64,000 nucleotides of DNA, from assembly GCA_038496445.1 (NCBI GenBank), contig JALMLS010000596.1, positions 1 through 64,000 on the forward strand, read 5' to 3'. The position numbers and the translations under genes are program-made. Shown piece after piece: positions 7,505 to 21,711 of the stretch (position 1 is its first letter; every line of letters begins with the position of its first letter). The notes under the pieces are model-generated. The model did no database searches and was not told the origin of the DNA. It was given only the letters and a program-made list of their open reading frames with translations. This DNA comes from Trichosphaerium sp. ATCC 40318. Its lineage: Eukaryota; Protista; Tubulinea.

Positions 7505-9040
7505 ATGGCGTTACACGAATATGGCTATATTATGCTCTATGCGGCTCTTATTCTACTCATTGGCTTATGTAGTACTATTATTCCGTTCATTATTAAACAA
7601 CGGGGTCCTATGAATGATCCTAACGCTCTGTTGTGGTTCTTTCTATCCCTTACGTTCAAATTCTCTGCGGGCGTACTAATAAGCGCGGGTACAGTACATA
7701 TGGCAGGAGATAGCTTGTGTACGGTTTTAGAATTTTAGTTGTTTTTTATGACCATTTGGGTTGTCATTAGTTTTAGTGGTTTTTTTTGTACTAAGCAACG
7801 CCAATAGCCAGTTGGACAGAATACTCAAACTGCACGGGACCACATTTTTCAGGTATTTTTTTGATTGAAATTTTTTTTTCGCGATTTCTCGGTTACTGAC
7901 GTCACTCTTTTAGAACCTTCTTGTGATGATTTTATTTCTGTTGTAAACTTGGAGAATAACACTGTATACTTTTGTCCTGGTTCTTGCTCTTCGTACCCTT
8001 GGCAAGTCTTTTTCTTTTTTTTTCTTGAAAATTATTTGTATTTTACAAAACTGTTGAAGTGTTTTTTCTTTTGTTCACCGACATCCTCTTGTTTTAAAGG
8101 TCTAATATTTTACTGTAGGTGGCTGGTATTTATTGGAATCGGCATTATTGTTGTGGCAACTCTAGAAGCTTTGTCTTCTCACGAACATGCCGGTAAGTGA
8201 CTCAAAACAAAACACACAAGGAAGAGAAAAAGGATCTTCTTTTTCTTTTCGTTTTTGTTGTTGACGCGAGCTCTGTATTCTAATCTACAACTTTTCTAGA
8301 TTTCTTTGGTGGCTCTGATGAACTAAATAGCTTACTACGGTCACAGACAAGCACTCAGTATGATACTTTACTGACCGAAGAAAAACCAAAAAAGCGTAAA
8401 CACCCTCTTCTCGGCCACTCTTTTGTGTTACTATTGGCGCTTGTAGTACACTCAGTATTGGCTGGATTCTCTCTAGGGTCTTCACTAAGAGGTGAAGGAG
8501 AAGGTTGGGGGATTTTTGGGGCCATAGTGGCTCACAAGGTAAATCACAACAGAATCACAAAAAAAATTCTGATTCTTTTTTCTGAACGTCTTTTTAAGGG
8601 TTTCGCCGGCTATGCTCTTGGTGTGAGTCTAGTAACTTCTAAAATACCATTCTGGGTACGTAATACAAAAATAACTCCTAAGTAAAGTTAACCTGTATCT
8701 AGTATTGGGGAGCAATTATGAGTGCAGCATTCTCCGCAAGTACACCTTTAGGTATGCTCTTTTTTTTTTTTTCCTTCATTTTCTGTGTTGTTTGTGATTC
8801 GTGGTAGGTGTTATCCTTGGTGGTACTTTACTCACTTTATTGGATGGACCAGCAAGGTTACTAACAGATGCTATTCTTCTTGGACTTGCTTCTGGAACGT
8901 TCATTTATATTGGACTTGTTGAAATGTTTTTGGCGGATATTTTTGTTCAAATGAGACGTGGTATTTGGAGTGGCTTACTACATGGCTTTATGGCTTTAAT
9001 AGGGTTTATAACAATGTCCATACTTGCTTTATGGGTATGA
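7505..9040 (+). CDS. ZIP (Zrt/Irt-like) metal transporter
   Basis: FSAGVLISAGTVHMAGDS (TM2), ALVVHSVLAGFSLG (TM4), AHKGFAGYALG (TM5), STPLG, LASGTFIYIGLVEM (TM7), ALWV* end. Confidence 0.9.
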
Positions 9041-10743: not shown

Positions 10744-11451
10744 TGAGGTTATAGTTTGATATAATGATCCAGTCATGTCAGGTCAGGAAGACGGAACAGC
10801 TTCTTAAAAAGGTAAGTCTGCCGAGATTTTTGAAAAATGCCCGCGACGTAAGAATATATAAATATTCCTCGGTTTCTCTTAAATGTAAACCGATATTGAG
10901 GATAATAGTTTACTGCTATACCTTGTCTTCGGAGGACATTAAAATGATGGTGATCGAAAACCAAAGGTTTTGAAAAAAAAAATAAAAATAAAACAGTCAT
11001 TAAACTTTAAATGTGTAGCTTCAGTTCTCTATTATATATAATGAAGTATCTCATACCACTTCAATATGTATGATTTATTGCGTGTAGGCTTGACGGGCGT
11101 ACCCAATAATTGTATGGCTACAAAGTTATAAATAGAAAAACAGAACATAAAGGAGATATGGTGTACAGGGAACGCATGTGAAAGATCGCGGTATCAAGGA
11201 GAGATAATCAATTGAAAACAGTAATCCTGCGGAGCAATAATTGACGTGGATGTGTCATGAAGTCAGCCACGTGCATGTCTGTCGCGAAGTGGTACCAATT
11301 GATATCGGACTCCTATTTTATGTGCAATGTAAATAATTTACCACATGATACATAAGGAACAAACTACAAAAGGGTTATTTTGATTGACGTGACAATGTAA
11401 GTTTTATTGTTTGTTGTTTCGATTGTTTAATACTTATGCTTTCTTGTATAT

Positions 11452-14110
11452 TTAGGCGTTGTTGCCTTTATTCCATTTATACTTTCTCTTGTACAGCATA
11501 TCCAAGAACATGTAAGGGCAATGCACCTATTGCGGAATAAGCTAGGTGACTAAACAACAATTGTAAACATACTTCGTATCTTTCCTTCTCACCACCAGTT
11601 TTATCACCTTGTTCATCATCTTCGTCATCACTATCCTCCTCTCCTATCCATGTATTCCATAGCAACTGTGCAGACTCTAGTGCTTTCTGTGAAGAATATT
11701 AAATACACAGAAAAACAAGCAGTTTGATGAACAACTTATTATTTGAAAGAAAATCTAACAAGTTGTTTGTTGTGAAATCATACCTCGCCTTTATCATCTG
11801 ATGGATAGTAAACAAGTACATGTACTTTGGCATAATATGCAGCAGCGATTTGAATTAGTGCCATCAACTCACAATCATTGCCATACCTATCAAGACTTGA
11901 ACAATGAAATAAAACTTGCTCGAGTTTTCTTCTCATGATTAAAATAACTTACGGTCCACAACCCCTATTTTCAATTATCAGATTAGAATCAAACTAATAG
12001 TAGTATTACAACGTACCAATTACCAGTGTGTATAATTACACAGAACTCATCATCTTCTTCAGACTCGTCATCAGAGTCATCTTCATTGTCATACCAATCA
12101 TCACTATCATTCATGTCTTCTGTTTTATCTTCTACCTTTTTATCCCCATTGGCGTTCTTTTCTGCCAGTCCAATCTTAGATTCATGAACAGCTACAAACA
12201 TCAAGTTAATGGAAACAAAATCTTGAATGAATGAAAGGGTACCAGATACAAATGATGTGTAAGCAGTACGTAAAGCATACTCAAGCTGCCACTTTTTGTA
12301 CTCTTTTCCCCAATCTCTCTGGCACCCTATTTTACAGTGAATACAATTTTTGTGATAAATATTTCTTCAGGAACCTGGTGCTTCCATGCTAACATAAAAG
12401 GTCAGTTGAATAAAATTATTACAAATATTATTTCCATACCAAATAAGATTAGTCACTGTAGGTCCATTCTTAACTTTGGAAATTCCATCTCTAATTGCCT
12501 TCTTTGATGTCATTCTTCCTAATTTCATGCCATACAGCTTATCTGTATCTATAACACCATGACGTTCAACGCCACTATAAAAAAACAACTCAGTATTTTG
12601 ATAAAAAACAAAATGAATGTACCGAATAAGAATGGGTGTTGGAGATGAAGTTTCTTTTTTGCTGTTTTCGAATTTACGTGTATAAGTATTTAACTGTTTT
12701 GATTCATCATCACCCTCACTAGCTTTTTGAAGTAGCACTAAAGGGAACAAAGTATTAAAAAGAAGCAATAAAGATGAAGCTATGAGTATGGTTCAGCAAA
12801 ACGTACTTTCACGAATTGAAGCAAGAGCTGGATGCTCTGCAACTTGAATCTCGTCTTGAGCAAATAAATATTTTGTACCATAATACTCGAACACATCTGT
12901 GTGTGCGAAGTTGAGGTACCAACTGAAATCATTTGGCTATGTTGTTGAGTAAATTAAATGTACCACTACAGTCTATGTATTGTACGTACTTGTGGCTCCT
13001 AAAAGTGTTTAGCACAAAACAAAAAAAAGTTTTAAGGGTTTTTGATACCTTATCATAGTATGTGAATGCTCCTTCAGTCGATAATATTTCTAAGTAGTGT
13101 TCTTCAGTATCTTCTAAGATATTCGCTTTTCCATTTCCATCTGTGCGATCCACAACTTTTTTAGTGTCATCAACAACCTGAAATAAATCAATAAAAAGAG
13201 TATGATAAGTGCTTGTCTTGTACCTCTTTGCCATCCACTATAAATATATACTCGTGGTTGGCATCTTCATCATCAAGATCTGGTAGCTCTGATACAACTA
13301 CCGCCCAAACATTCTCTACACTTTCAAGTTAGACGAAAAAGAAGACGAGAAAGAGTTTTACGTACCTGTGTGTAACTCAATACACTGAAGATTAATTGGT
13401 CTATCTTTTCGCCACAAATTAAATGTACCAACAACCTGTACTTGTTTTGCTTTGCGTTCAGGGTCATGCCAAACAAACGAAATACCGAATCCTATAAAAT
13501 TCAGTCCATAAAATTAAATTCATAAAATGATTGAAAACACGTGATAAACAGTCAAGATAAGCGCCTTTCTTGTAAAAATATCAAGACTTCAAACGAACGT
13601 TTCGCCCATGGTGCATGTGATAAACAAAAAAAAATTCGAGTTAGTGAATCTTGTGCATTTTTGGCATGAAGCTTATGCAGGTCAAAAGTGTTTGTACCTG
13701 CGTTATCAGGGAACTTTGCGACATCCACTTTCGTAACAACCACTTTTGAAGATGCTGTACCATGTTTAGCATACTCTGCTATTGTTTTATACACAGTTAT
13801 CTTCCTTGAGCCTTTTACTATAGGTGGATACTTTTTAACAAAGCCGCTTGTGTTGAAGGTCCTTCTCACCATAAAGTGCTCTGGATCAATGAGACCTAAC
13901 ATCAACCGATTAATGAAAAAAGAGAAAAACCGCGTTTGTTGTTGTTTTGGCACGTTTTTTGTTTTTAGGTGCCCACGTGCCATATTTGTTTGCACGTTTG
14001 ATATTAGAGCCTTCCTCTATTGATGCGCTATCCCATTTCTCTCGTTGAGCTAGGAAATCGTCATCATCCTCAAAATCAGAAAATTCTTCGTCAGAGCTTT
14101 CGTTTAACAT
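11452..14110 (-). CDS. poly(ADP-ribose) glycohydrolase (PARG)-like macrodomain protein with inserted CBM48/AMPK-beta-type glycogen-binding module
   Basis: WYLNFAHTDVFEYYGTKYLFAQDEIQVAEHP (PARG NFA...QEE-like loop), PTPILIRGVER, ALRTAYTSF, IIHTGNWGCGPYGND..LMALIQIAAA; insert FVWHDPERKAKQVQVVGTFNLW...VWAVVVSELP...HEYIFIVDGK. Confidence 0.8.
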
Positions 14111-14241
14111 GTTTGGTACGCTTTAAAAACTGATTGATAGAACAAAATTGACTTTATATCTTTGTTCCGCTTTATCTGAACGAACAGTGAGCCGGCTCGA
14201 AATCTTAGCTTTTTTTTTTTCAAACAAGAGGCGAGTGCCGT

Positions 14242-14392
14242 CTTGATAAACGAGTTTTGCTAGTAGTTTGTATTGAATGTTTGCACAGGAAACTGCTAGA
14301 GTACTCAAAGCTTGACAAACGAGTTAAGTTAGTATTTTGTATTGAATGATTACACAGTTAACTGCTAACCTATCACAAATTGCTTGATAACT
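14242..14392. repeat. diverged ~69-72 bp tandem repeat, about 2.1 copies
   Basis: cttgataaacgagtt...ttgtattgaatgtttgcacaggaaactgcta at 14242; cttgacaaacgagtt...ttgtattgaatgattacacagttaactgcta at 14311; third start cttgataa at 14383. Confidence 0.8.
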
Positions 14393-14821
14393 CTTAACTA
14401 TGTTCACGCTTTTACCACAAACACCGAGACAAGTCATTCGGGTTCATGTTCTTCCTACCCAACAATTTTGTAACTTTTAACCTCATGTTGATATTTATTA
14501 AGCCCGCTCTTTTATTAATTGTTAACATCTTTACTGATTCATTTCATCTTTACATCTACAGTTACAGTATATTACATCGCTTATTTTTTGAACCAAAAGC
14601 ATCATTGTACTCTGAAGGATCATGGTAGGGCCTATTAATGATACTGGAATATTATCAATAAGTTTAAAAAAAATCTCAATATTGTCACGTGTTTAGCAGA
14701 TGATTCCATGAATTCAACGTTATGAAGCCCTGCCAATTCTTCTACATCTGTTTTACTCACCTGTCTTTGTTTACACAAATCTGATTTATTTCCTACAATA
14801 ATAATCGGCGGTTCACAATTA

Positions 14822-16760
14822 GTCAAACATGAAAAGTGTCCCAAAAATTTTGAACAACAAATGAAGCCCGCACCTAATGAAAAGAGTTCCCAGATCACTC
14901 TTGCTGCCAATGACGTAATAAAAATTTACCACGACAAAAGCGAGGAACCACATGGCTCATTAAACGAAATTTGCACGGAAGTGGCTGCTATCTACGGCGT
15001 AATCCCTAATTCACTACAAAAGAGAGTTCACCGAGCACTTAGACGGGAGAATTTGGGGCACGGAAATTTAATATTTACGAAAACACAAGAAAAAAAACTC
15101 GTGGGGTACTGTACGGCGTTTGATGCGATGCATATGCCTTTATCACTTGAAGAACTACGGAGTACCGCACGTGTTTTGTTTAAAAAAAGACCCCAATCTG
15201 ATATGCGAGGTTGGTTTGATGGGTTCAAGAAACGTTGGTCAGATTTCCTTACTGAGATGACTCCAAAACCAATAAGCTACCAACGCGTTACACCAAAGAC
15301 TTTAGTCCTCACTGGAAAGTTCTGTGACGCCTATGAAGAAATTCAAGAGAGAATCCCAACCATTCCTGAAATTATGATCAACGCTGATGAAAAACTTTTT
15401 GTTTTCAAAAATAACAAGTTTACTCACCATGTGATGGGAGCACGGAGGCGCACTAATCATGGTACAATAGCACTAAGGTCAGGCTTAAATGTGACACTGG
15501 TCCCATTTGTATCAGCTACTGGGAAGGTCCTCCTCACAGTGTACATTATGGCGGCTAGAAAAAATGGAAAGCCAACTCAAAAGGCAAATTTCATGATCCA
15601 CAAAGAACGTAACACTCGTTCATCATGGCCGCGTTACTACTGCTATCACCGCAATGGTTACGTAACAAATGAAATTTGGCCGAAGATTTTGACAGTGTTC
15701 CTTAAAGAAATTTCGAGTTTCAGGGAGATCGAACAGCAATTTTATTTTTGGATCGCTTGTCACCTCACATTAAAAAAGAACACCTTTTACAATGTATGGA
15801 AAAGAATGTGATGACCATGGTATGGCCAGCACATACATCTCATTTTCAACAACCTCTCGATGATAAACCATTTGCGACCTTAGCCAAGACTTTCACAAAA
15901 CTGCATGCACAAGAGAGTAAGCATGCCATAGTGACTAGGAGCCAACAATATTTTAATTTGAGTATTGTTCACAAAGCAGAAAGACAAGCCTTATTACCTC
16001 ATATCATTAAAAGCGCTTGGGAGAGTGTTGGTATATGGCCGTATGATCGTAAAAAAATTTTGGACCGGGCAAAAAAAAATGTTGGTAAAAAAAGTTCAAA
16101 CTCCACTGCGCCAAGTGACCCTGAAGTTGAAGAAGCTGAACTAGTAATGCAACATGTAATTGAATCAAAAATGCCTCCTAGAAAGAAAAGAACAATTTCC
16201 TTCCATATGGGAAAGGAGGATGTATTCGGCACAGAAGGGTTGGTCTATTTTCAAGATGAGTATGATGAAAAAAAAAGGCTTGAAAAAGAAGCTGCAGAAG
16301 TTAACAGATAAAAGCACAAGGCAGCCTCTGTTGCAAAAAAGAAGGAGCAAGAAAGTCGTAAGAAGCAGAGAGCAGAATCCAAACTAAAAAATCAAATTCG
16401 CAAAAAAGAAGAAAGTGCTAAAAAAAAGTACTTCCATCAAATTTACACCTGTCGTGAATGTATGTTAAAGTTGTGGAGAGGTGGCGCAGGGTGGAAGTGG
16501 TGCATCAATTGTGGTACTCACATGGTGTGCCCAAATTGCATCAAATTGTACGCAGCTAAAGTGCGATTTATAACTCATGAGAATGGTTGCTCATATAGAA
16601 GTCGCACGTTGTAGAATATGCGCAGTGGTGTTAATGACGTGTGACGAAAGTTTTAAACTGCTAGATTAAATAGTGTAAAAATAAAAAATAAATTACAAAA
16701 AAAACATGGCATTTTTTTTTGGGACACTTTACATGTTTTGGGACACTTTTCATGTTTGAC
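14822..16760 (+). mobile_element. pogo/Fot1-like (Tc1/mariner superfamily, DDE_1) DNA transposon, ~1.94 kb
   Basis: 25-bp perfect TIRs gtcaaacatgaaaagtgtcccaaaa (14822-14846 / 16736-16760), TA on both flanks, internal transposase, extra gggacacttt subrepeat in the right end. Confidence 0.92.
14861..16614 (+). pseudogene. DDE transposase (CENP-B/Tc5-like HTH + DDE + C-terminal Cys-rich finger), inactivated
   Basis: GWFDGFKKRW (Tc5-like HTH), INADEK, LFLDRLSPH, PAHTSHFQQPLD, CREC...WKWCINCGTHMVCPNC; frameshift ~15720 and in-frame TAA at 16309. Confidence 0.88.
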
Positions 16761-17717: not shown

Positions 17718-20700
17718 TTAAGTCTCATATTCACCTTCCTCTATGCCATCTTCATCTACTAACAAATCTCTTTGAAGTAAATGAATCATAACAGCAGTGG
17801 TAAGCAAAAGTTGATTCAATTTTTCTTCATTGGCTTCCAAAACATTAAGACAAGCCAAAATCTTCATCTTCATAAAATAAATGAGCAAAGAATTTGCTGT
17901 AGAAAACAAAAACATTCCATGTGGTCCGTTCTGGTCAATAGTCGGTATAACTCGAGAAACAGACTCAGTGATGTTTAGCATAGACGCAATCATTTCTTTT
18001 GGCGTCTCTATCTCTTGCCAGTTCTCAACCTCGTTAATGAGAGCCTCTACAGGCTGCAATGTGCTTTCTGGGATGAAAGGAGGATCAGCTTGTGCATAAG
18101 TCTGCAAATCGGTTAGAGCCTTGTCAAAGAACTCTGTAGCAGTTTCAAGGTTGATTGGATGAATTTGCTTCAAATCTTTCGTAAGATGCTTGAATTGTTC
18201 AACCAAAGCCTTTACTTGCATCATAAGCGCTTCACTCTGGCCAGAGGATATAGCTATAACGCAATCAGACAAAAAAAATTAAGTTTGTAGACTTTACCTT
18301 CTTTGGCTAGTATGATGAACCTCGCTGCTGTCTCGGATACTCGAGCACTGCGTGCAAGAAGTACTTGTTGAGCATCTTGATTTAGAATCAAGTTAGCTCT
18401 GAATTGAGTCAATTTAACGGCCTTAATAATTATAATTAGTCATACTACAACAACCTAGATCACTCGTACTCTATCAACATCATTAAGTAGAGGTAACTTC
18501 TTTTCTTCAAGCTGTTGCGCTGTCATTGTGTTCTGGGCCATAATTCCACGCAAAATAGAAGCAGTTTTACCAGCTGCAGCTTGAGTATGTTGTTGGATGT
18601 TTGTTACCTAGGTAGCACAGTCAACACGACGTCTTTGAACCTACAGAAGCCGACAATCACCAAAAACATACCAACTTTGATTCCAGTGCTTCAAAGCAAG
18701 ACATGTAGAACGACATGCACAGTGATACAAATGGATGACTACGAGATAATACAATATTCCTTGCAAAGATTTAGTTGGTTACAACAGTATCTACGCGTAC
18801 TTTTTTTGAACATTTGTAGGATCGTCCACAAGGTCTTTTGTTGCCTGCACCAATGCTGCTTTTTCATTCTGCAGCTGTATAGCAGCTGTGAGTATTGGTT
18901 TTTGATAGTCCGCAGTAAACTACATAGAAACGTAAGTAAACAACCGTTTAATAGCCAAAACGTACGTCAGCCACCAACGTCTTTACGCTTATAAACATTG
19001 GTTCCAAATCGCTTACCAAGAACGCTAGAGAATCTAAAGGGAAACCCATGAGAATATTGCCAACAACAAGGAGACTCTACATACCATTCAATGCGACTGG
19101 ATCAATATCATCTTCTTGAGTCAACGTATTGAGTAGAAAATGACAAACAGAATCAGCTACATGCGGCATTTGCGCCTGCCAGCAACCATTTATCACACCG
19201 CTTGGATACAAAGCTGTAAAAATAATAAATAAGACAACGAATATCAAACTATGACCGTACAAGCAATACTATGTTCTGCACTAGCCAAAAATGGTGAATC
19301 CGTAGTAGGTGGCGCAATCTGTGGCTCTGGACGCGTTTCCTCAGGTGGAATTTCTTCTACTGCAGGAGCTCCACGACTAGCCTAAAAAATACTTCAACTC
19401 AGGAACTCTCAGCATAAGTATTAGAAAACATACCGTAGATGACCTTCTTTCACTTCTCGGAGGTGGTGGCCTCTTAGGCTCACTAACCGCAGCACGTTGG
19501 GATAATGTCTTTTGTGTAGGCCTTGGCATTGGCCTCTTTTTCAAAGAGTAAGATGGCGCTCCTTTAGGAGGTGCAGGGCGTGTAGCAGGTGCTCCAGAAC
19601 GGGGTATTGCAGGAGTAGGACCTTGTGGCTTTACTGGAGAAACTGCTCCAGCACCTGGTTGTTGTGACCCTGAAGTACCCTCAAACACTTCTGGTGCATG
19701 TTCGATTAACGCTTTAATTATTACGTTGACAACTTCCATTTCACGAACCATCGCCTTAAAACAAAGACATTTAATATATTATAATGTCAGCTATATCTAA
19801 GTACCATAGGGTCAGCGCCACCAGGGTTATGAAGTAAGTTCGGTCCAAGAACTGTAGCTAAATTCGAGGCAGTCATTTTGTTTACCTAAACTAACTTTTA
19901 GTACCAGCATTAAAAAGTCTGTGCTAATATTAATTACCTCCTCATTTTGGTTTATACGCCAACACATTTTCATAATACGAGACAAAGACTCGTAGTTTTC
20001 GATTGGTAGTGATTGCACAGTTGCAGTCAATTTTGGAATAGAAGGTTCACGCTCAGGGCCTAAGAATAACAACCCAATCAGAAAAAAATGAAATAAAAAT
20101 TCCTTTCTACATACCAACAGAAGAGATAAATTCGCTATACTTCGCTGCAGTCAATAGAGGATCCGGTAGTTCCCGGAGATATAATTTAAGAATACCAGAG
20201 ACAATATGAGGGTTCTCTATTTCTGTAAAATCAATATTGCCTGAACTGTCAATTTTTGTCTTCAAATCTTGTAAATCATCTTTTACCTATCAAAAAAACC
20301 GCCAGTGTCAAAACAATACGATAATAACATATACATACCGCTGAAACACGGAAAATCCCTTGAATATCTAAAGCGTTCTCTTCAATCCAAGCACAAGATG
20401 TATCAATTATGGCAGGAACATTTACAGCCTCACGCTGTGCAATAGAACTAAAATCTTGTCCGAAAACTCTAGTATCCTTTTGCTTTGAAAGAACCTCCGA
20501 TGCAGCAACCATCACTTGTTCTTTGTATTGTTCAAACTTTGGCATCAATTGATCACAATATTTTTTTCCTTCGGTGAAAAACGTAGTCAATGATTCAAAC
20601 ACCTCTACCATCTTATTCATCGTTAAAATTTCAGTCTGTTGGTTAGCTGCGATGAGAGAACGTTCTACATCTGCTTCTACAAGTTCAAATTCATGTCTAA

Positions 20701-21711
20701 AACAAGTTAACACGCGAAACAAAAGCAATAAAAAAATGATAATTTTTATAACATCTGGCATGATTTGGGAAGCGTACTTTGCTGATTTCGCTTCTTGGTC
20801 AGCTTCAGAAAGTTTGATAGGATCCTTTTGCTTACGCGACCTACACGTTACGATAAGAAAAAATAATAAAGAGCAGTTTGTGGATGAATAACGCATTTTG
20901 ACATCCAAAAAAAGGCGAGAAGCGATAACTCGTATCACGATAGAACAACATACCTCATACTCCTCAATCTTGTCAAGGCACTGTCGTAACTCTGTAAACT
21001 CTTTGTATATCTCTTTTTCTCCTCCTAGACGAAGAGTAAGACGATAAATTCTCTTTTTTGTGGTTTGTTATGTAGTGTACAATTGCTTCTCTTATTTCTC
21101 TTTCTAGATGATTTTCTAATGCGTTTGGGAGGAATAAGCGTTTGTCCTAACAAAAAACGTCAACTTTTGTTTTTGTTTTTCCCGAGAATAGATGGCTATA
21201 GAAATGGCACAACAAACGCGTAACGCGCAACTATTCGGAGGAGAGCGCCAAAAATGTTGCGTACAAACTTTTCTTTCATCTCTTCTACTTTAGCGCTTAA
21301 ATTACCCATGTCATTTAGGAACGCCACTAGGTAGAATAAGTACAATGTAGATTTTCGCCGCGTTGAAAATACCAAAATGAGTTTTAGTGTTATCTTGCTC
21401 TCCTATCTTGTGGCTGTACTCGAAGTAGAGTCTCGACAAATTTCTTCCTTCTCTTATCGAGTCTTTTCTTGTTAGCCTAATTTTACCTTCTTTACGCACT
21501 CTTGTTATTATTAATCTGTTTGCGAAAGGTTTTAATTATTTCTTTGAGCTGGTGTTTATTTAAGTCCAAGATCTGCAACAGATCAGCAAACGACGGGTTA
21601 AAGCGCCAAAGCTTTATGTACCAGCGATTGTAGAGCCACTGTCTGACTATCTTCAACGCAATCGGTTGTTTTCTTTGCACCAAAGGATGTGTTCCAAAAC
21701 TTCTTACGCAT
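17718..21711 (-). CDS. BAR-domain RhoGAP with Pro-rich linker and C-terminal helical-bundle region
   Basis: VFGQDF..VPAIIDTSCAWIEENALDIQGIFRVSA, LKLYLRELPDPLL, NKMTASNLATVLGPNLL; N-terminal coiled BAR-like exons from ATG 21711. Confidence 0.85.

What the first reader, a model, noticed from the sequence alone, without database searches (positions are those of the whole stretch)
11452..14110. PARG-like ADP-ribose hydrolase with a glycogen-binding module inserted inside it
Seen after manual splicing: PARG-type motifs (LNFA...FAQDEIQVAEHP; HTGNWGCG) and, between the N-terminal segment and the catalytic loop, a CBM48/AMPK-beta-like module (FVW...V.VVGTFNLW...W...V..LP...HEY.FIVDG, ~13130-13490). 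The catalytic loop reads QDE instead of the canonical GGG-x6-8-QEE; from memory this resembles a poorly studied bacterial/amoebal PARG-like clade. Inference: an enzyme targeting ADP-ribose removal to glycogen particles, or acting on a related glycoside, implying an undescribed link between ADP-ribosylation and glycogen metabolism.
Basis: partly seen in the sequence, partly recalled or inferred. Interest (0 to 1): 0.78.

Follow-up and report, generated by a model that had tools for sequence, protein, structure and literature searches.

The report
PARG-like enzyme with inserted glycogen-module
An amoeba-like protist has an intact, spliced gene for a little-known cousin of the enzyme that trims poly(ADP-ribose), with a roughly 100-residue module resembling a glycogen-binding domain inserted into one of its surface loops; the gene and the insertion are real, but neither the enzyme activity nor glycogen binding has been shown.

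Summary
A 16-exon gene lies on the minus strand at 14110..11452, with 15 GT-AG introns, 555 codons and no internal stop. An intron-less 1821-nt contig from a public run, about 92% identical, joins every exon, so the CBM and PARG exons are one message.

About 99 residues are inserted between family profile positions 61 and 66. None of 386 fetched relatives has an insert there. The first insert exon hits AMPK1_CBM (E 0.004) and CBM48 clusters in the ESM Atlas. The second insert exon gave nothing on its own. By motif, two of three residues critical for glycogen binding appear changed.

Targeting to glycogen and ADP-ribose hydrolysis are inferences. First readers noted the same architecture elsewhere in this genome (unchecked).

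The parts
13954..14110 (-). Exon 1: start codon at 14110-14108, acidic N-terminus followed by a basic patch (52 codons plus 1 base).
   Evidence: ORF reading. Contigs of run X1 cover 13980-14093 with no differences and end about 10 nt upstream of the ATG. The donor at 13954/13953 is inferred from frame only; relatives differ here, with 42 other letters.
13698..13895 (-). Exon 2: N-terminal segment of the PARG-like fold (YPP...K...VVVTK...FP).
   Evidence: Family HMM positions 6-61, 15.7 bits, E 5e-6. Joint 13490->13697 seen in transcripts.
13366..13491 (-). Exon 3: start of the inserted module, the first half of a CBM48/AMPK-beta-like domain (FVW...VQVVGTFNLW).
   Evidence: Pfam AMPK1_CBM E=0.0042, 17.7 bits, profile positions 5-30 of 85. 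ESM Atlas features give CBM_48/AMPK1_CBM clusters at 0.93-0.95. No match to the PARG-like family HMM. Joints on both sides seen in transcripts.
13224..13315 (-). Exon 4: middle of the inserted module (NVWAVVVSELP, an acidic stretch, then HEYIFIVDGKE).
   Evidence: Read from the sequence. No Pfam hit and no informative Atlas hit on its own. The resemblance to the LP..G.H.YKF.VDG.W motif of AMPK beta is recalled from memory. Joints seen in transcripts.
13049..13177 (-). Exon 5: the first 24 codons (13177-13106) end the insert; the remainder (...YLEILSTEGAFTYYDK) returns to the PARG-like fold.
   Evidence: Family HMM positions 66-81 for residues 25-40, with invariant Tyr kept.
12990..12998 (-). 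Exon 6: 9-nt microexon (EPQ).
   Evidence: Eight extra letters matching it lie between joint sides 12936 and 13048 in contigs of X2 and X4. GT..AG on both sides.
12807..12936 (-). Exon 7: catalytic-loop exon (SWYLNFAH...YLFAQDEIQVAEHPALASIRE), with QDE at 12858-12850.
   Evidence: Family HMM positions 88-128, 68.6 bits, E 4e-22. 246 cluster representatives at E<=1e-3 among 1.84 billion proteins. Thirteen invariant residues kept.
12623..12737 (-). Exon 8: charged Lys/Glu-rich stretch (partly extra relative to the family), then the SSPTPILI strand.
   Evidence: Family HMM positions 133-150 for residues 20-37. Joints seen in transcripts.
12440..12574 (-). Exon 9: GVERH...LYG...PTVTNLI block.
   Evidence: Family HMM positions 153-202, E 6e-4, with invariant Y and G kept.
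12375..12388 (-). Exon 10: 14-nt microexon (C-MEAP-G), matching the family motif AMEAPxG.
   Evidence: Twelve extra letters matching it lie between joint sides 12328 and 12440 in X1, X2 and X4. Family consensus; translation.
12243..12326 (-). Exon 11: helix block (KEYKKWQLEYALRTAYTSF).
   Evidence: Family HMM positions 212-231, E 3e-5.
12017..12191 (-). Exon 12: acidic low-complexity insert, then the strand ending in IIHTGN(W).
   Evidence: The 51-nt in-frame intron 12242-12192 is spliced out in three runs. Family HMM positions 240-252 for the last 13 residues. Translation.
11953..11964 (-). Exon 13: 12-nt microexon completing W-GCG-P of the diphosphate-binding loop.
   Evidence: Eleven extra letters lie between joint sides 11886 and 12016 in X2. 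Translation and junction codons.
11784..11886 (-). Exon 14: YGNDCELMALIQIAAA... (the rest of the diphosphate loop and the following helix).
   Evidence: Family HMM positions 258-290, 26.9 bits, E 2e-9. Pfam PARG_cat_C E=0.055, profile positions 173-203.
11573..11686 (-). Exon 15: helix followed by an acidic stretch.
   Evidence: Joints 11686->11785 and 11524->11571 seen in transcripts. Reading.
11452..11526 (-). Exon 16: C-terminal tail (...YKWNKGNNA) and stop codon at 11454-11452.
   Evidence: A 46-nt intron (11572-11527) is seen only in transcripts. The tail aligns weakly to the family's ...WGxSDGN end at HMM positions 316-331. The relatives' contigs diverge from the window immediately past the stop (loose ends at 11451).

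Best explanation
Shown: the gene is intact and has 16 exons. It encodes a 555-residue member of an uncharacterised PARG-fold family that I call QDE-type here. Its catalytic loop has the same length as that of canonical PARG but reads NFA(H/D)-x14-QDE instead of DFAN..GGG-x-QEE. A module of about 99 residues has been inserted into the loop between two N-terminal beta strands, upstream of the catalytic loop.

Inferred, for the insert: it is a CBM48/AMPK-beta-type beta sandwich. Its first half matches the profile, and the remaining length fits the rest of the domain.

Inferred, for the mechanism: the PARG-like core binds an ADP-ribose-type ligand using the retained diphosphate loop (HTGNWGCGPYGN, with Tyr in place of the PARG Phe). 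It cleaves a ribosyl glycosidic bond using the invariant Asp-Glu pair, where Glu corresponds to the proton donor E756 of human PARG and Asp takes the place of the water-activating E755. The inserted module holds the enzyme on alpha-glucan (glycogen) particles or on a glycogen-associated partner, so that the activity is confined to that compartment.

My confidence that the fold and architecture are as described is about 0.9. For a CBM48-type insert it is about 0.7. The figure given below applies to the complete functional reading, a glycogen-tethered ADP-ribosyl hydrolase.
For: Gene model: 15 GT..AG introns and no stops. One 1821-nt intron-less contig joins all exons, and the indels in the relatives that are listed with a length are multiples of three.

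Family membership: exon-wise matches to a 58-sequence family HMM are collinear from position 6 to 331, and 23 of 23 invariant residues are kept.

[quoted passage not shown] The roles of the two Glu residues and the Phe in PARG are taken from PMC4030884.

Insert: Pfam AMPK1_CBM E=0.0042 for exon 3 and CBM_48/AMPK1_CBM Atlas clusters. The 63 residues after the matched part fit the remaining 55 profile positions. The insertion site is a coil between strands 51-57 and 77-81 of the model.

Context: some bacterial members are fused to DSP-type phosphatases of the PTP-SAK/PTP-NADK kind. This hints at NAD/ADP-ribose-related chemistry.
Against: The PARG signature is not met: there is no GGG, and the first Glu is Asp. 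No activity is known for any member of this family; NCBIfam and PADLOC gave nothing and no paper was found. The second CBM exon has no independent support. By motif, the K126 and W133 equivalents of AMPK beta1 read I and E, and mutating those residues abolishes or weakens glycogen binding (PMC6274970). The fold of the window protein itself, and of its insert, was not predicted. The spliced contigs are about 92% identical to the window, so they come from a paralogue or close relative; for this copy only exon 1 is seen at 100% identity. Bacterial gene neighbourhoods show no conserved ADP-ribosyltransferase partner.
Confidence: 0.38

Rival explanations
1. The PARG-like core is an active hydrolase, but the inserted beta module no longer binds glucan, or never did. 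It would instead serve as a protein-protein docking or regulatory module, as the AMPK beta CBM also does when it packs against the kinase domain. The enzyme would then not be a glycogen-particle enzyme.
For: By motif, two of the three residues whose mutation abolishes or weakens AMPK beta1 glycogen binding appear changed, K126 to I and W133 to E (PMC6274970). Exon 4 alone gives no CBM signal. An 8-residue acidic stretch interrupts the module.
Against: The W100 equivalent (FNLW) is kept. The first half still scores as AMPK1_CBM/CBM48. Earlier unchecked notes of this scan report the same module fused to several unrelated enzymes in this genome, which fits a common targeting address better than many separate protein partners.
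Confidence: 0.25
2. The protein is a non-catalytic reader or pseudo-enzyme. The PARG fold would bind ADP-ribose or a related nucleotide without cleaving it, and the protein would act as an adaptor.
For: The GGG part of the catalytic loop, in which a glycine is known to matter for PARG function, is absent, and the first catalytic Glu is replaced by Asp (PMC4030884).
Against: Q-D-E and ten other loop residues are invariant across bacteria, archaea and eukaryotes in 58 diverse sequences. The second Glu, the proton donor, is kept, Asp is still a carboxylate, and the loop length is unchanged. Most family members are single-domain proteins in bacteria, which is unusual for pure readers.
Confidence: 0.2
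3. The QDE-type family acts on a substrate other than protein-linked ADP-ribose, for example another nucleotide-sugar-type glycoside or a modification carried by the glucan itself. In that case the CBM would deliver the enzyme to its actual substrate rather than to a compartment.
For: The catalytic loop is rewritten yet strictly conserved. The family is common in bacteria such as Planctomycetota, cyanobacteria and myxobacteria, with no ADP-ribosyltransferase partner evident in the three neighbourhoods I read. Fusions to DSP phosphatases and methyltransferases echo the DSP-plus-CBM logic of the glucan phosphatases SEX4 and laforin (established knowledge).
Against: The diphosphate loop GxWGCGAFGG is almost identical to that of PARG, which argues for an ADP-containing ligand. 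There is no direct evidence for any alternative substrate.
Confidence: 0.12
4. The locus is a decaying paralogue or an artefact of manual splicing, not a working gene.
For: Contigs identical to this copy were listed only for exon 1. The exon 1/2 junction is inferred from frame alone.
Against: There are 555 codons across 16 exons with no stop or frameshift and GT..AG at every intron. All 23 family-invariant residues are kept. Fourteen junctions are reproduced in spliced contigs of close relatives.
Confidence: 0.03

Closest known systems
Canonical eukaryotic PARG catalytic domain (human PARG residues 616-952, e.g. PDB 4B1H, 7KG0; Tetrahymena 4EPP)
   Different: There is no GGG, and the first Glu is Asp. 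The DFAN motif reads NFA(H/D). There is no N-terminal accessory domain: no PARG_cat_N hit, and Pfam PARG_cat_C matches only the C-terminal half of the family. The window protein carries an insert of about 99 residues plus acidic low-complexity inserts. Its activity is unknown.
Bacterial-type PARG (DUF2263; Thermomonospora curvata 3SIG/3SIH, Deinococcus radiodurans 5ZDB)
   Different: It is a more distant match than canonical PARG. It carries the full GGG-X6-8-QEE signature, whereas the QDE family does not.
AMPK beta-subunit carbohydrate-binding module (Pfam AMPK1_CBM PF16561, CAZy CBM48)
   Same: Exon 3 matches profile positions 5-30 and Atlas clusters of this family and clan. The tryptophan of the FNxW motif, the W100 equivalent, is kept. 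The insert length fits one module.
   Different: The module is inserted in a loop of an enzyme fold rather than lying in a scaffold subunit. The score is below the gathering threshold because only exon-sized pieces could be scanned. The K126 and W133 equivalents read I and E by motif. There is an acidic 8-residue interruption.
Glucan phosphatases SEX4 (DSP + CBM48) and laforin (CBM20 + DSP)
   Same: They follow the same design logic: a small hydrolytic domain is given a glucan-binding module so that it acts at the storage-polysaccharide particle (established knowledge, not tested here).
   Different: The catalytic fold is unrelated, and the CBM is terminal rather than inserted. No sequence relationship was tested.
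DUF4804 macrodomains (Legionella MavL and Larg1, arginine-specific ADP-ribosylhydrolases)
   Same: They are also atypical macrodomain hydrolases that lack the PARG and MacroD signatures.
   Different: Their signature motifs ([VIL]xGxGxGx[FWY] and WDxx[SA]xPGN[DE]) are different (PMC10951314). Pfam gives no DUF4804 hit for the QDE family. I rejected this as the family.

Membership tests
PARG (canonical, Pfam PARG_cat_N + PARG_cat_C) | PARG-type macrodomain fold | tested here: met
PARG (canonical, Pfam PARG_cat_N + PARG_cat_C) | Catalytic signature GGG-X6-8-QEE with two consecutive Glu | tested here: not met
   The loop reads FEYYGTKYLFAQDE. It has no GGG, and Asp replaces the first Glu; the second Glu is present. 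The same is true throughout the family.
PARG (canonical, Pfam PARG_cat_N + PARG_cat_C) | Diphosphate-binding loop with a conserved aromatic residue (GxWGCGAFGGD; Phe875 in human) | tested here: met
   HTGN-W-GCG-P-YGND across exons 12-14, with Tyr in place of Phe and Pro in place of Ala.
PARG (canonical, Pfam PARG_cat_N + PARG_cat_C) | N-terminal accessory domain (PARG_cat_N) | tested here: not met
   No Pfam PARG_cat_N hit in any exon or in ten family members. The structural match starts at human residue 616.
PARG (canonical, Pfam PARG_cat_N + PARG_cat_C) | Hydrolysis of poly(ADP-ribose) | not testable with these tools
   This needs a biochemical assay.
   Exons map in order to HMM positions 6-61, 66-81, 88-128, 133-150, 153-202, 212-231, 240-252, 258-290 and 316-331. 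The best exon scores 68.6 bits, E 4e-22.
   Nineteen were checked by alignment of exons. The other four (A219, W247, G248, G250) were read in the microexons MEAP and GCG and in the junction codon TGG.
   The tail reads YKWNKGNNA. The Trp is kept but the glycines are not, and the HMM score is about 0 bits.
CBM48 / AMPK1_CBM (PF16561) | Significant match to the family profile over the whole module | tested here: inconclusive
Exon 3 alone gives E 0.0042, 17.7 bits against a cut-off of 26.8, covering profile positions 5-30 of 85. Exons 4 and 5 alone give no hit.
CBM48 / AMPK1_CBM (PF16561) | Beta-sandwich fold | not tested
   This requires folding the joined exons 3-5, which was left out. ESM Atlas features of exon 3 point to CBM_48/AMPK1_CBM, and those of exon 4 are uninformative.
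CBM48 / AMPK1_CBM (PF16561) | Glycan-contacting residues (AMPK beta1 W100, K126, W133) | tested here: inconclusive
   By motif, the W100 equivalent is kept (FNLW), K126 reads I (HEYIF) and W133 reads E (VDGKE). The mutational data come from PMC6274970. The residue mapping rests on my memory of the AMPK beta motif, not on an alignment made here.
CBM48 / AMPK1_CBM (PF16561) | Binding to glycogen or starch | not testable with these tools
   This needs a pull-down or co-sedimentation assay.

The most novel reading that the evidence does not exclude
In this protist, glycogen particles would be a site of ADP-ribose-type modification, either of glycogen-associated proteins or of the glucan itself. 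A dedicated subfamily of QDE-type PARG-fold hydrolases would reverse that modification. These would be anchored to the particle by a CBM48 module built into the catalytic fold and expanded in tandem arrays. This would also give a first substrate and function to a PARG-like family that is widespread in bacteria, Asgard archaea and protists.
Probability: 0.15. Interest if true: 0.8.

Novelty: new variant of a known kind. Interest (0 to 1): 0.55.

Why it matters
Current reviews divide PARG-type enzymes into canonical and bacterial types, both defined by GGG-X6-8-QEE. This gene belongs to a third, conserved PARG-fold family with an invariant QDE loop. In the libraries and papers I could search, the family has no assigned function, and it is mis-named 'tyrosyl-tRNA synthetase' in several protist genomes.

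A glucan-binding-type module inserted inside the fold is, as far as my searches reached, unique to this lineage. It suggests where the enzyme works and gives a concrete handle for a first biochemical study of the family: test ADP-ribose substrates, test glycogen binding, and mutate Asp-Glu and the Trp.

If the glycogen link is real, it would connect ADP-ribose signalling with storage-polysaccharide metabolism, a connection that has not been described. If it is not real, the case is still a clean example of domain insertion by exon gain in a genome that reuses CBM48 and PARG-like modules widely.

Tried and rejected
- **PDB sequence search of single exons.** The catalytic-loop exon, the C-terminal PARG exon and CBM exon 3 gave only chance hits or none.
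- **ESM Atlas on CBM exon 4.** Uninformative: 0.89, phage-tail clusters.
- **Word-index protein searches.** I ran three with alignments of family members plus exon rows. They found many relatives of about 335 aa, but none with PF16561 or PF02922 in the lists. Only the best 120 of 241, 226 and 726 hits are shown, so absence is not proven. Putting a 652-aa protein first in order to exclude the short forms did not work.
- **Exact look-up of the window ORF that contains exon 2.** Not on record.
- **Metagenome scans.** The scan with exon 2 found no relative. Exon 3 is too short for that tool.
- **NCBIfam and PADLOC on family members.** No hits.
- **Bacterial neighbourhoods of three members.** No conserved partner.
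- **MavL/Larg1 DUF4804 as the family.** Rejected because the motifs differ and Pfam gives no hit.
- **Paralogues in the window.** None found by tblastn.
- **ESM Atlas structure search with the family model.** Returned only PARG-type clusters.
Full report
**Observation.** The region is eukaryotic DNA, about 36% G+C. A minus-strand gene there is broken by very short introns. I read the three minus-strand frames and derived a model of 16 exons from the ATG at 14110 to the stop at 11454-11452. All 15 introns are GT..AG and 46-206 nt long. No exon has an internal stop, and the total is 1668 nt, or 555 codons plus the stop. Three exons are microexons of 9, 14 and 12 nt.

**Transcript evidence.** No run holds the stretch at high share. 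Contigs of three runs were laid on 11300-14300 at 90% likeness or more. One 1821-nt contig of run X2 (organism B, depth 72) lacks all introns and runs from past the stop to exon 1. It reproduces 14 of my 15 junctions. At the three microexons it carries 8, 12 and 11 extra letters that match them. It also revealed the last intron (11572-11527), which I had missed. Shorter contigs of X1 and X4 (organism A) show the same joints.

These contigs differ from the window by roughly 4-10% per exon, and their 3' ends diverge from the window immediately past the stop codon. They therefore come from paralogues or a close relative, not from this copy. Among the pieces listed, only exon 1 (13980-14093) is covered by a contig with no differences. 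The indels listed with a length are multiples of three. Expression of this exact copy is only partly shown. The exon 1/2 junction is inferred from frame alone.

**What the core is.**
- Pfam gave PARG_cat_C for exon 14 only weakly (E 0.055).
- The catalytic-loop exon, searched against 1.84 billion cluster representatives, gave 246 proteins at E<=1e-3. Identity was 55-76% over about 40 residues, and most hits were 310-350 residues long.
- Ten of these hits all carry Pfam PARG_cat_C, but only over their C-terminal half. NCBIfam and PADLOC give nothing.
- Named members come from Gemmataceae, cyanobacteria, myxobacteria and Lokiarchaeota/Promethearchaeota, and from the protists Acanthamoeba castellanii, Pelomyxa schiedti and Paratrimastix pyriformis. 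In those three protists they are named 'tyrosyl-tRNA synthetase', apparently a propagated error.

A 58-sequence alignment (A3) gives the family consensus...EWHxNFADxxLFxAYGGxLFAQDEMQVAEHPxLASLR...PTPxLIxGVERR...LYGN...SNIIAMEAP...TAYTGF...IHTGxWGCGAFGGN...LQxLAA...WGxSDGN. It has 23 invariant residues, concentrated in the catalytic and diphosphate loops.

An HMM built from A3 matches the window's exons in strict order from position 6 to 331, with exon 7 at 68.6 bits and exon 14 at 26.9 bits. All 23 invariant residues are present. Nineteen were checked by alignment. The other four were read in the microexons MEAP and GCG and in the split codon TGG. The 14-nt microexon reproduces the family motif AMEAPxG, which independently validates it.

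The sequence alignment to human PARG shows the same 14-residue spacing between FA and Q(E/D)E. GGG is replaced by bulky residues and the first Glu by Asp. The second Glu is the proton donor in the accepted mechanism, and the aromatic residue of the diphosphate loop positions the diphosphate (PMC4030884). Both are kept; the window protein has Tyr for Phe. The defining PARG signature is therefore not met. The gene should not be filed as a PARG, but it may well work like one.

**The insertion.** Exon 2 ends at profile position 61, and the profile resumes at position 66 inside exon 5. The last two residues of exon 2, exon 3, exon 4, the first 24 residues of exon 5 and two split codons, about 99 residues in all, match nothing in the family. 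In the model, this site is a coil between strand 51-57 and strand 77-81. Among 386 fetched family members, none has 15 or more inserted residues between profile positions 55 and 85, and none resembles exons 3-5. 'Inserted inside the fold' is therefore correct and appears to be specific to this lineage.

**Is the insert a CBM48?**
- Exon 3 alone hits AMPK1_CBM at E 0.0042 and 17.7 bits, covering profile positions 5-30 of 85. That is below the 26.8-bit cut-off, and it was one of ten queries in the call.
- The ESM Atlas feature search places exon 3 next to CBM_48/AMPK1_CBM clusters at 0.93-0.95. All of the ten best family-bearing hits belong to one family or clan.
- Exons 4 and 5 alone give nothing.
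- The 63 residues after the matched part fit the remaining 55 profile positions plus an 8-residue acidic stretch.
- From my memory of AMPK beta, the strings ...LP...HEYIFIVDG... and ...G..NIL resemble LP.G.H.YKF.VDG.W and G.VNN.I. On that mapping the W100 equivalent is kept, K126 reads I and W133 reads E. W100G and K126Q abolish glycogen binding by the beta1 CBM, and W133L weakens it (PMC6274970).

I rate a CBM48-type fold at about 0.7 and canonical glycogen binding at about 0.35.

**Context.** There is no paralogue in the window. The neighbours are unrelated: a ZIP-like transporter, a Tc5/pogo-like transposon remnant, a small-GTPase exon and a RhoGAP-like ORF. Earlier first-reader notes of this scan, unchecked, report the same architecture elsewhere in this genome, including a tandem array about 61 kb beyond the window. 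They also report CBM48 fused to other enzymes and PARG-like domains fused to other modules, and a follow-up note calls the organism an amoeba. Bacterial neighbourhoods of three family members show no conserved partner. Fusions occur with DSP-type phosphatases (PTP-SAK, Tc-R-P, PTP-NADK models), a class-I methyltransferase and an RNA-polymerase alpha CTD.

**Literature.** Reviews and surveys I could read recognise canonical and bacterial-type PARGs, both defined by GGG-X6-8-QEE, and note partly degenerate signatures in some protists (PMC4245714; PMC4030884). The DUF4804 macrodomains MavL and Larg1 have other motifs (PMC10951314). I found no description of the QDE family or of a PARG-CBM48 combination. 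The library is limited, so this is not proof.

**Verdict.** The functional reading, a glycogen-tethered ADP-ribosyl hydrolase, is the best single hypothesis at about 0.38. It rests on inference at both ends: the catalytic loop departs from the PARG signature, and the CBM is only half supported and has changed at key positions. The rivals are:
- an active enzyme whose insert is not a glucan binder;
- a non-catalytic reader;
- an enzyme with a non-ADP-ribose substrate.

Noticed in passing
window 14861-16311 (+), overlapping 14635-14910 (-): A 316-aa ORF with a Tc5-transposase HTH domain (Pfam E 1.5e-4, 22.1 bits against a cut-off of 22.2) is followed by an overlapping second ORF. This is probably a pogo/Tc5-like transposon remnant. 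It lies against an exon of a Ras/Rab-like small GTPase on the other strand (...IIIVGNKSDL...ESSAK).
   Followed up: partly
proteins P0269 (Acanthamoeba castellanii), P0147 (Pelomyxa schiedti), P0046 (Paratrimastix pyriformis): Members of the QDE-type PARG-fold family are named 'Tyrosyl-tRNA synthetase' in NCBI and UniRef. Pfam finds only PARG_cat_C in P0147, and the word search lists PF05028 as the only precomputed Pfam family for P0269 and P0046. The name looks like a propagated mis-annotation.
   Followed up: partly
protein P0002 (593 aa, source not named): It carries two tandem copies of the PARG-like domain in one protein. The first copy keeps the QV-AEHP loop but lacks the HTGxWGCGAFGG diphosphate loop. 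It may be a reader-plus-enzyme pair.
   Followed up: no
proteins P0078, P0098, P0187 (L004:6001-7566), P0234, P0036, P0261: Bacterial members of the family are fused to DSP-type phosphatases (PTP-SAK, Tc-R-P and, in P0078, PTP-NADK models), to a class-I methyltransferase or to an RNA-polymerase alpha C-terminal domain. In a cyanobacterium (L002) a Methyltransf_16 gene lies divergently next to the PARG-like gene.
   Followed up: partly
window 13697-13492 (-): Intron 2 is 206 nt, four times the usual length here, and it lies exactly at the 5' boundary of the inserted CBM-like module. That is compatible with the module having been gained by exon insertion. The 3' boundary of the insert is inside exon 5, not at an intron.
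   Followed up: no
window 7505-9040 (+) and 20276-20938 (-): ORF pieces here look like a ZIP-type metal transporter (HEHAGK, VVHSVLAGFSLG) and a RhoGAP-like protein (IQGIFRVS). I judged this from the sequence only.
   Followed up: no
protein P0269, residues 222-235 of the model: The Acanthamoeba family member lacks the conserved ...IxxILxTAYTGF helix, and the model has pLDDT below 50 there. The public gene model probably misses an exon.
   Followed up: no
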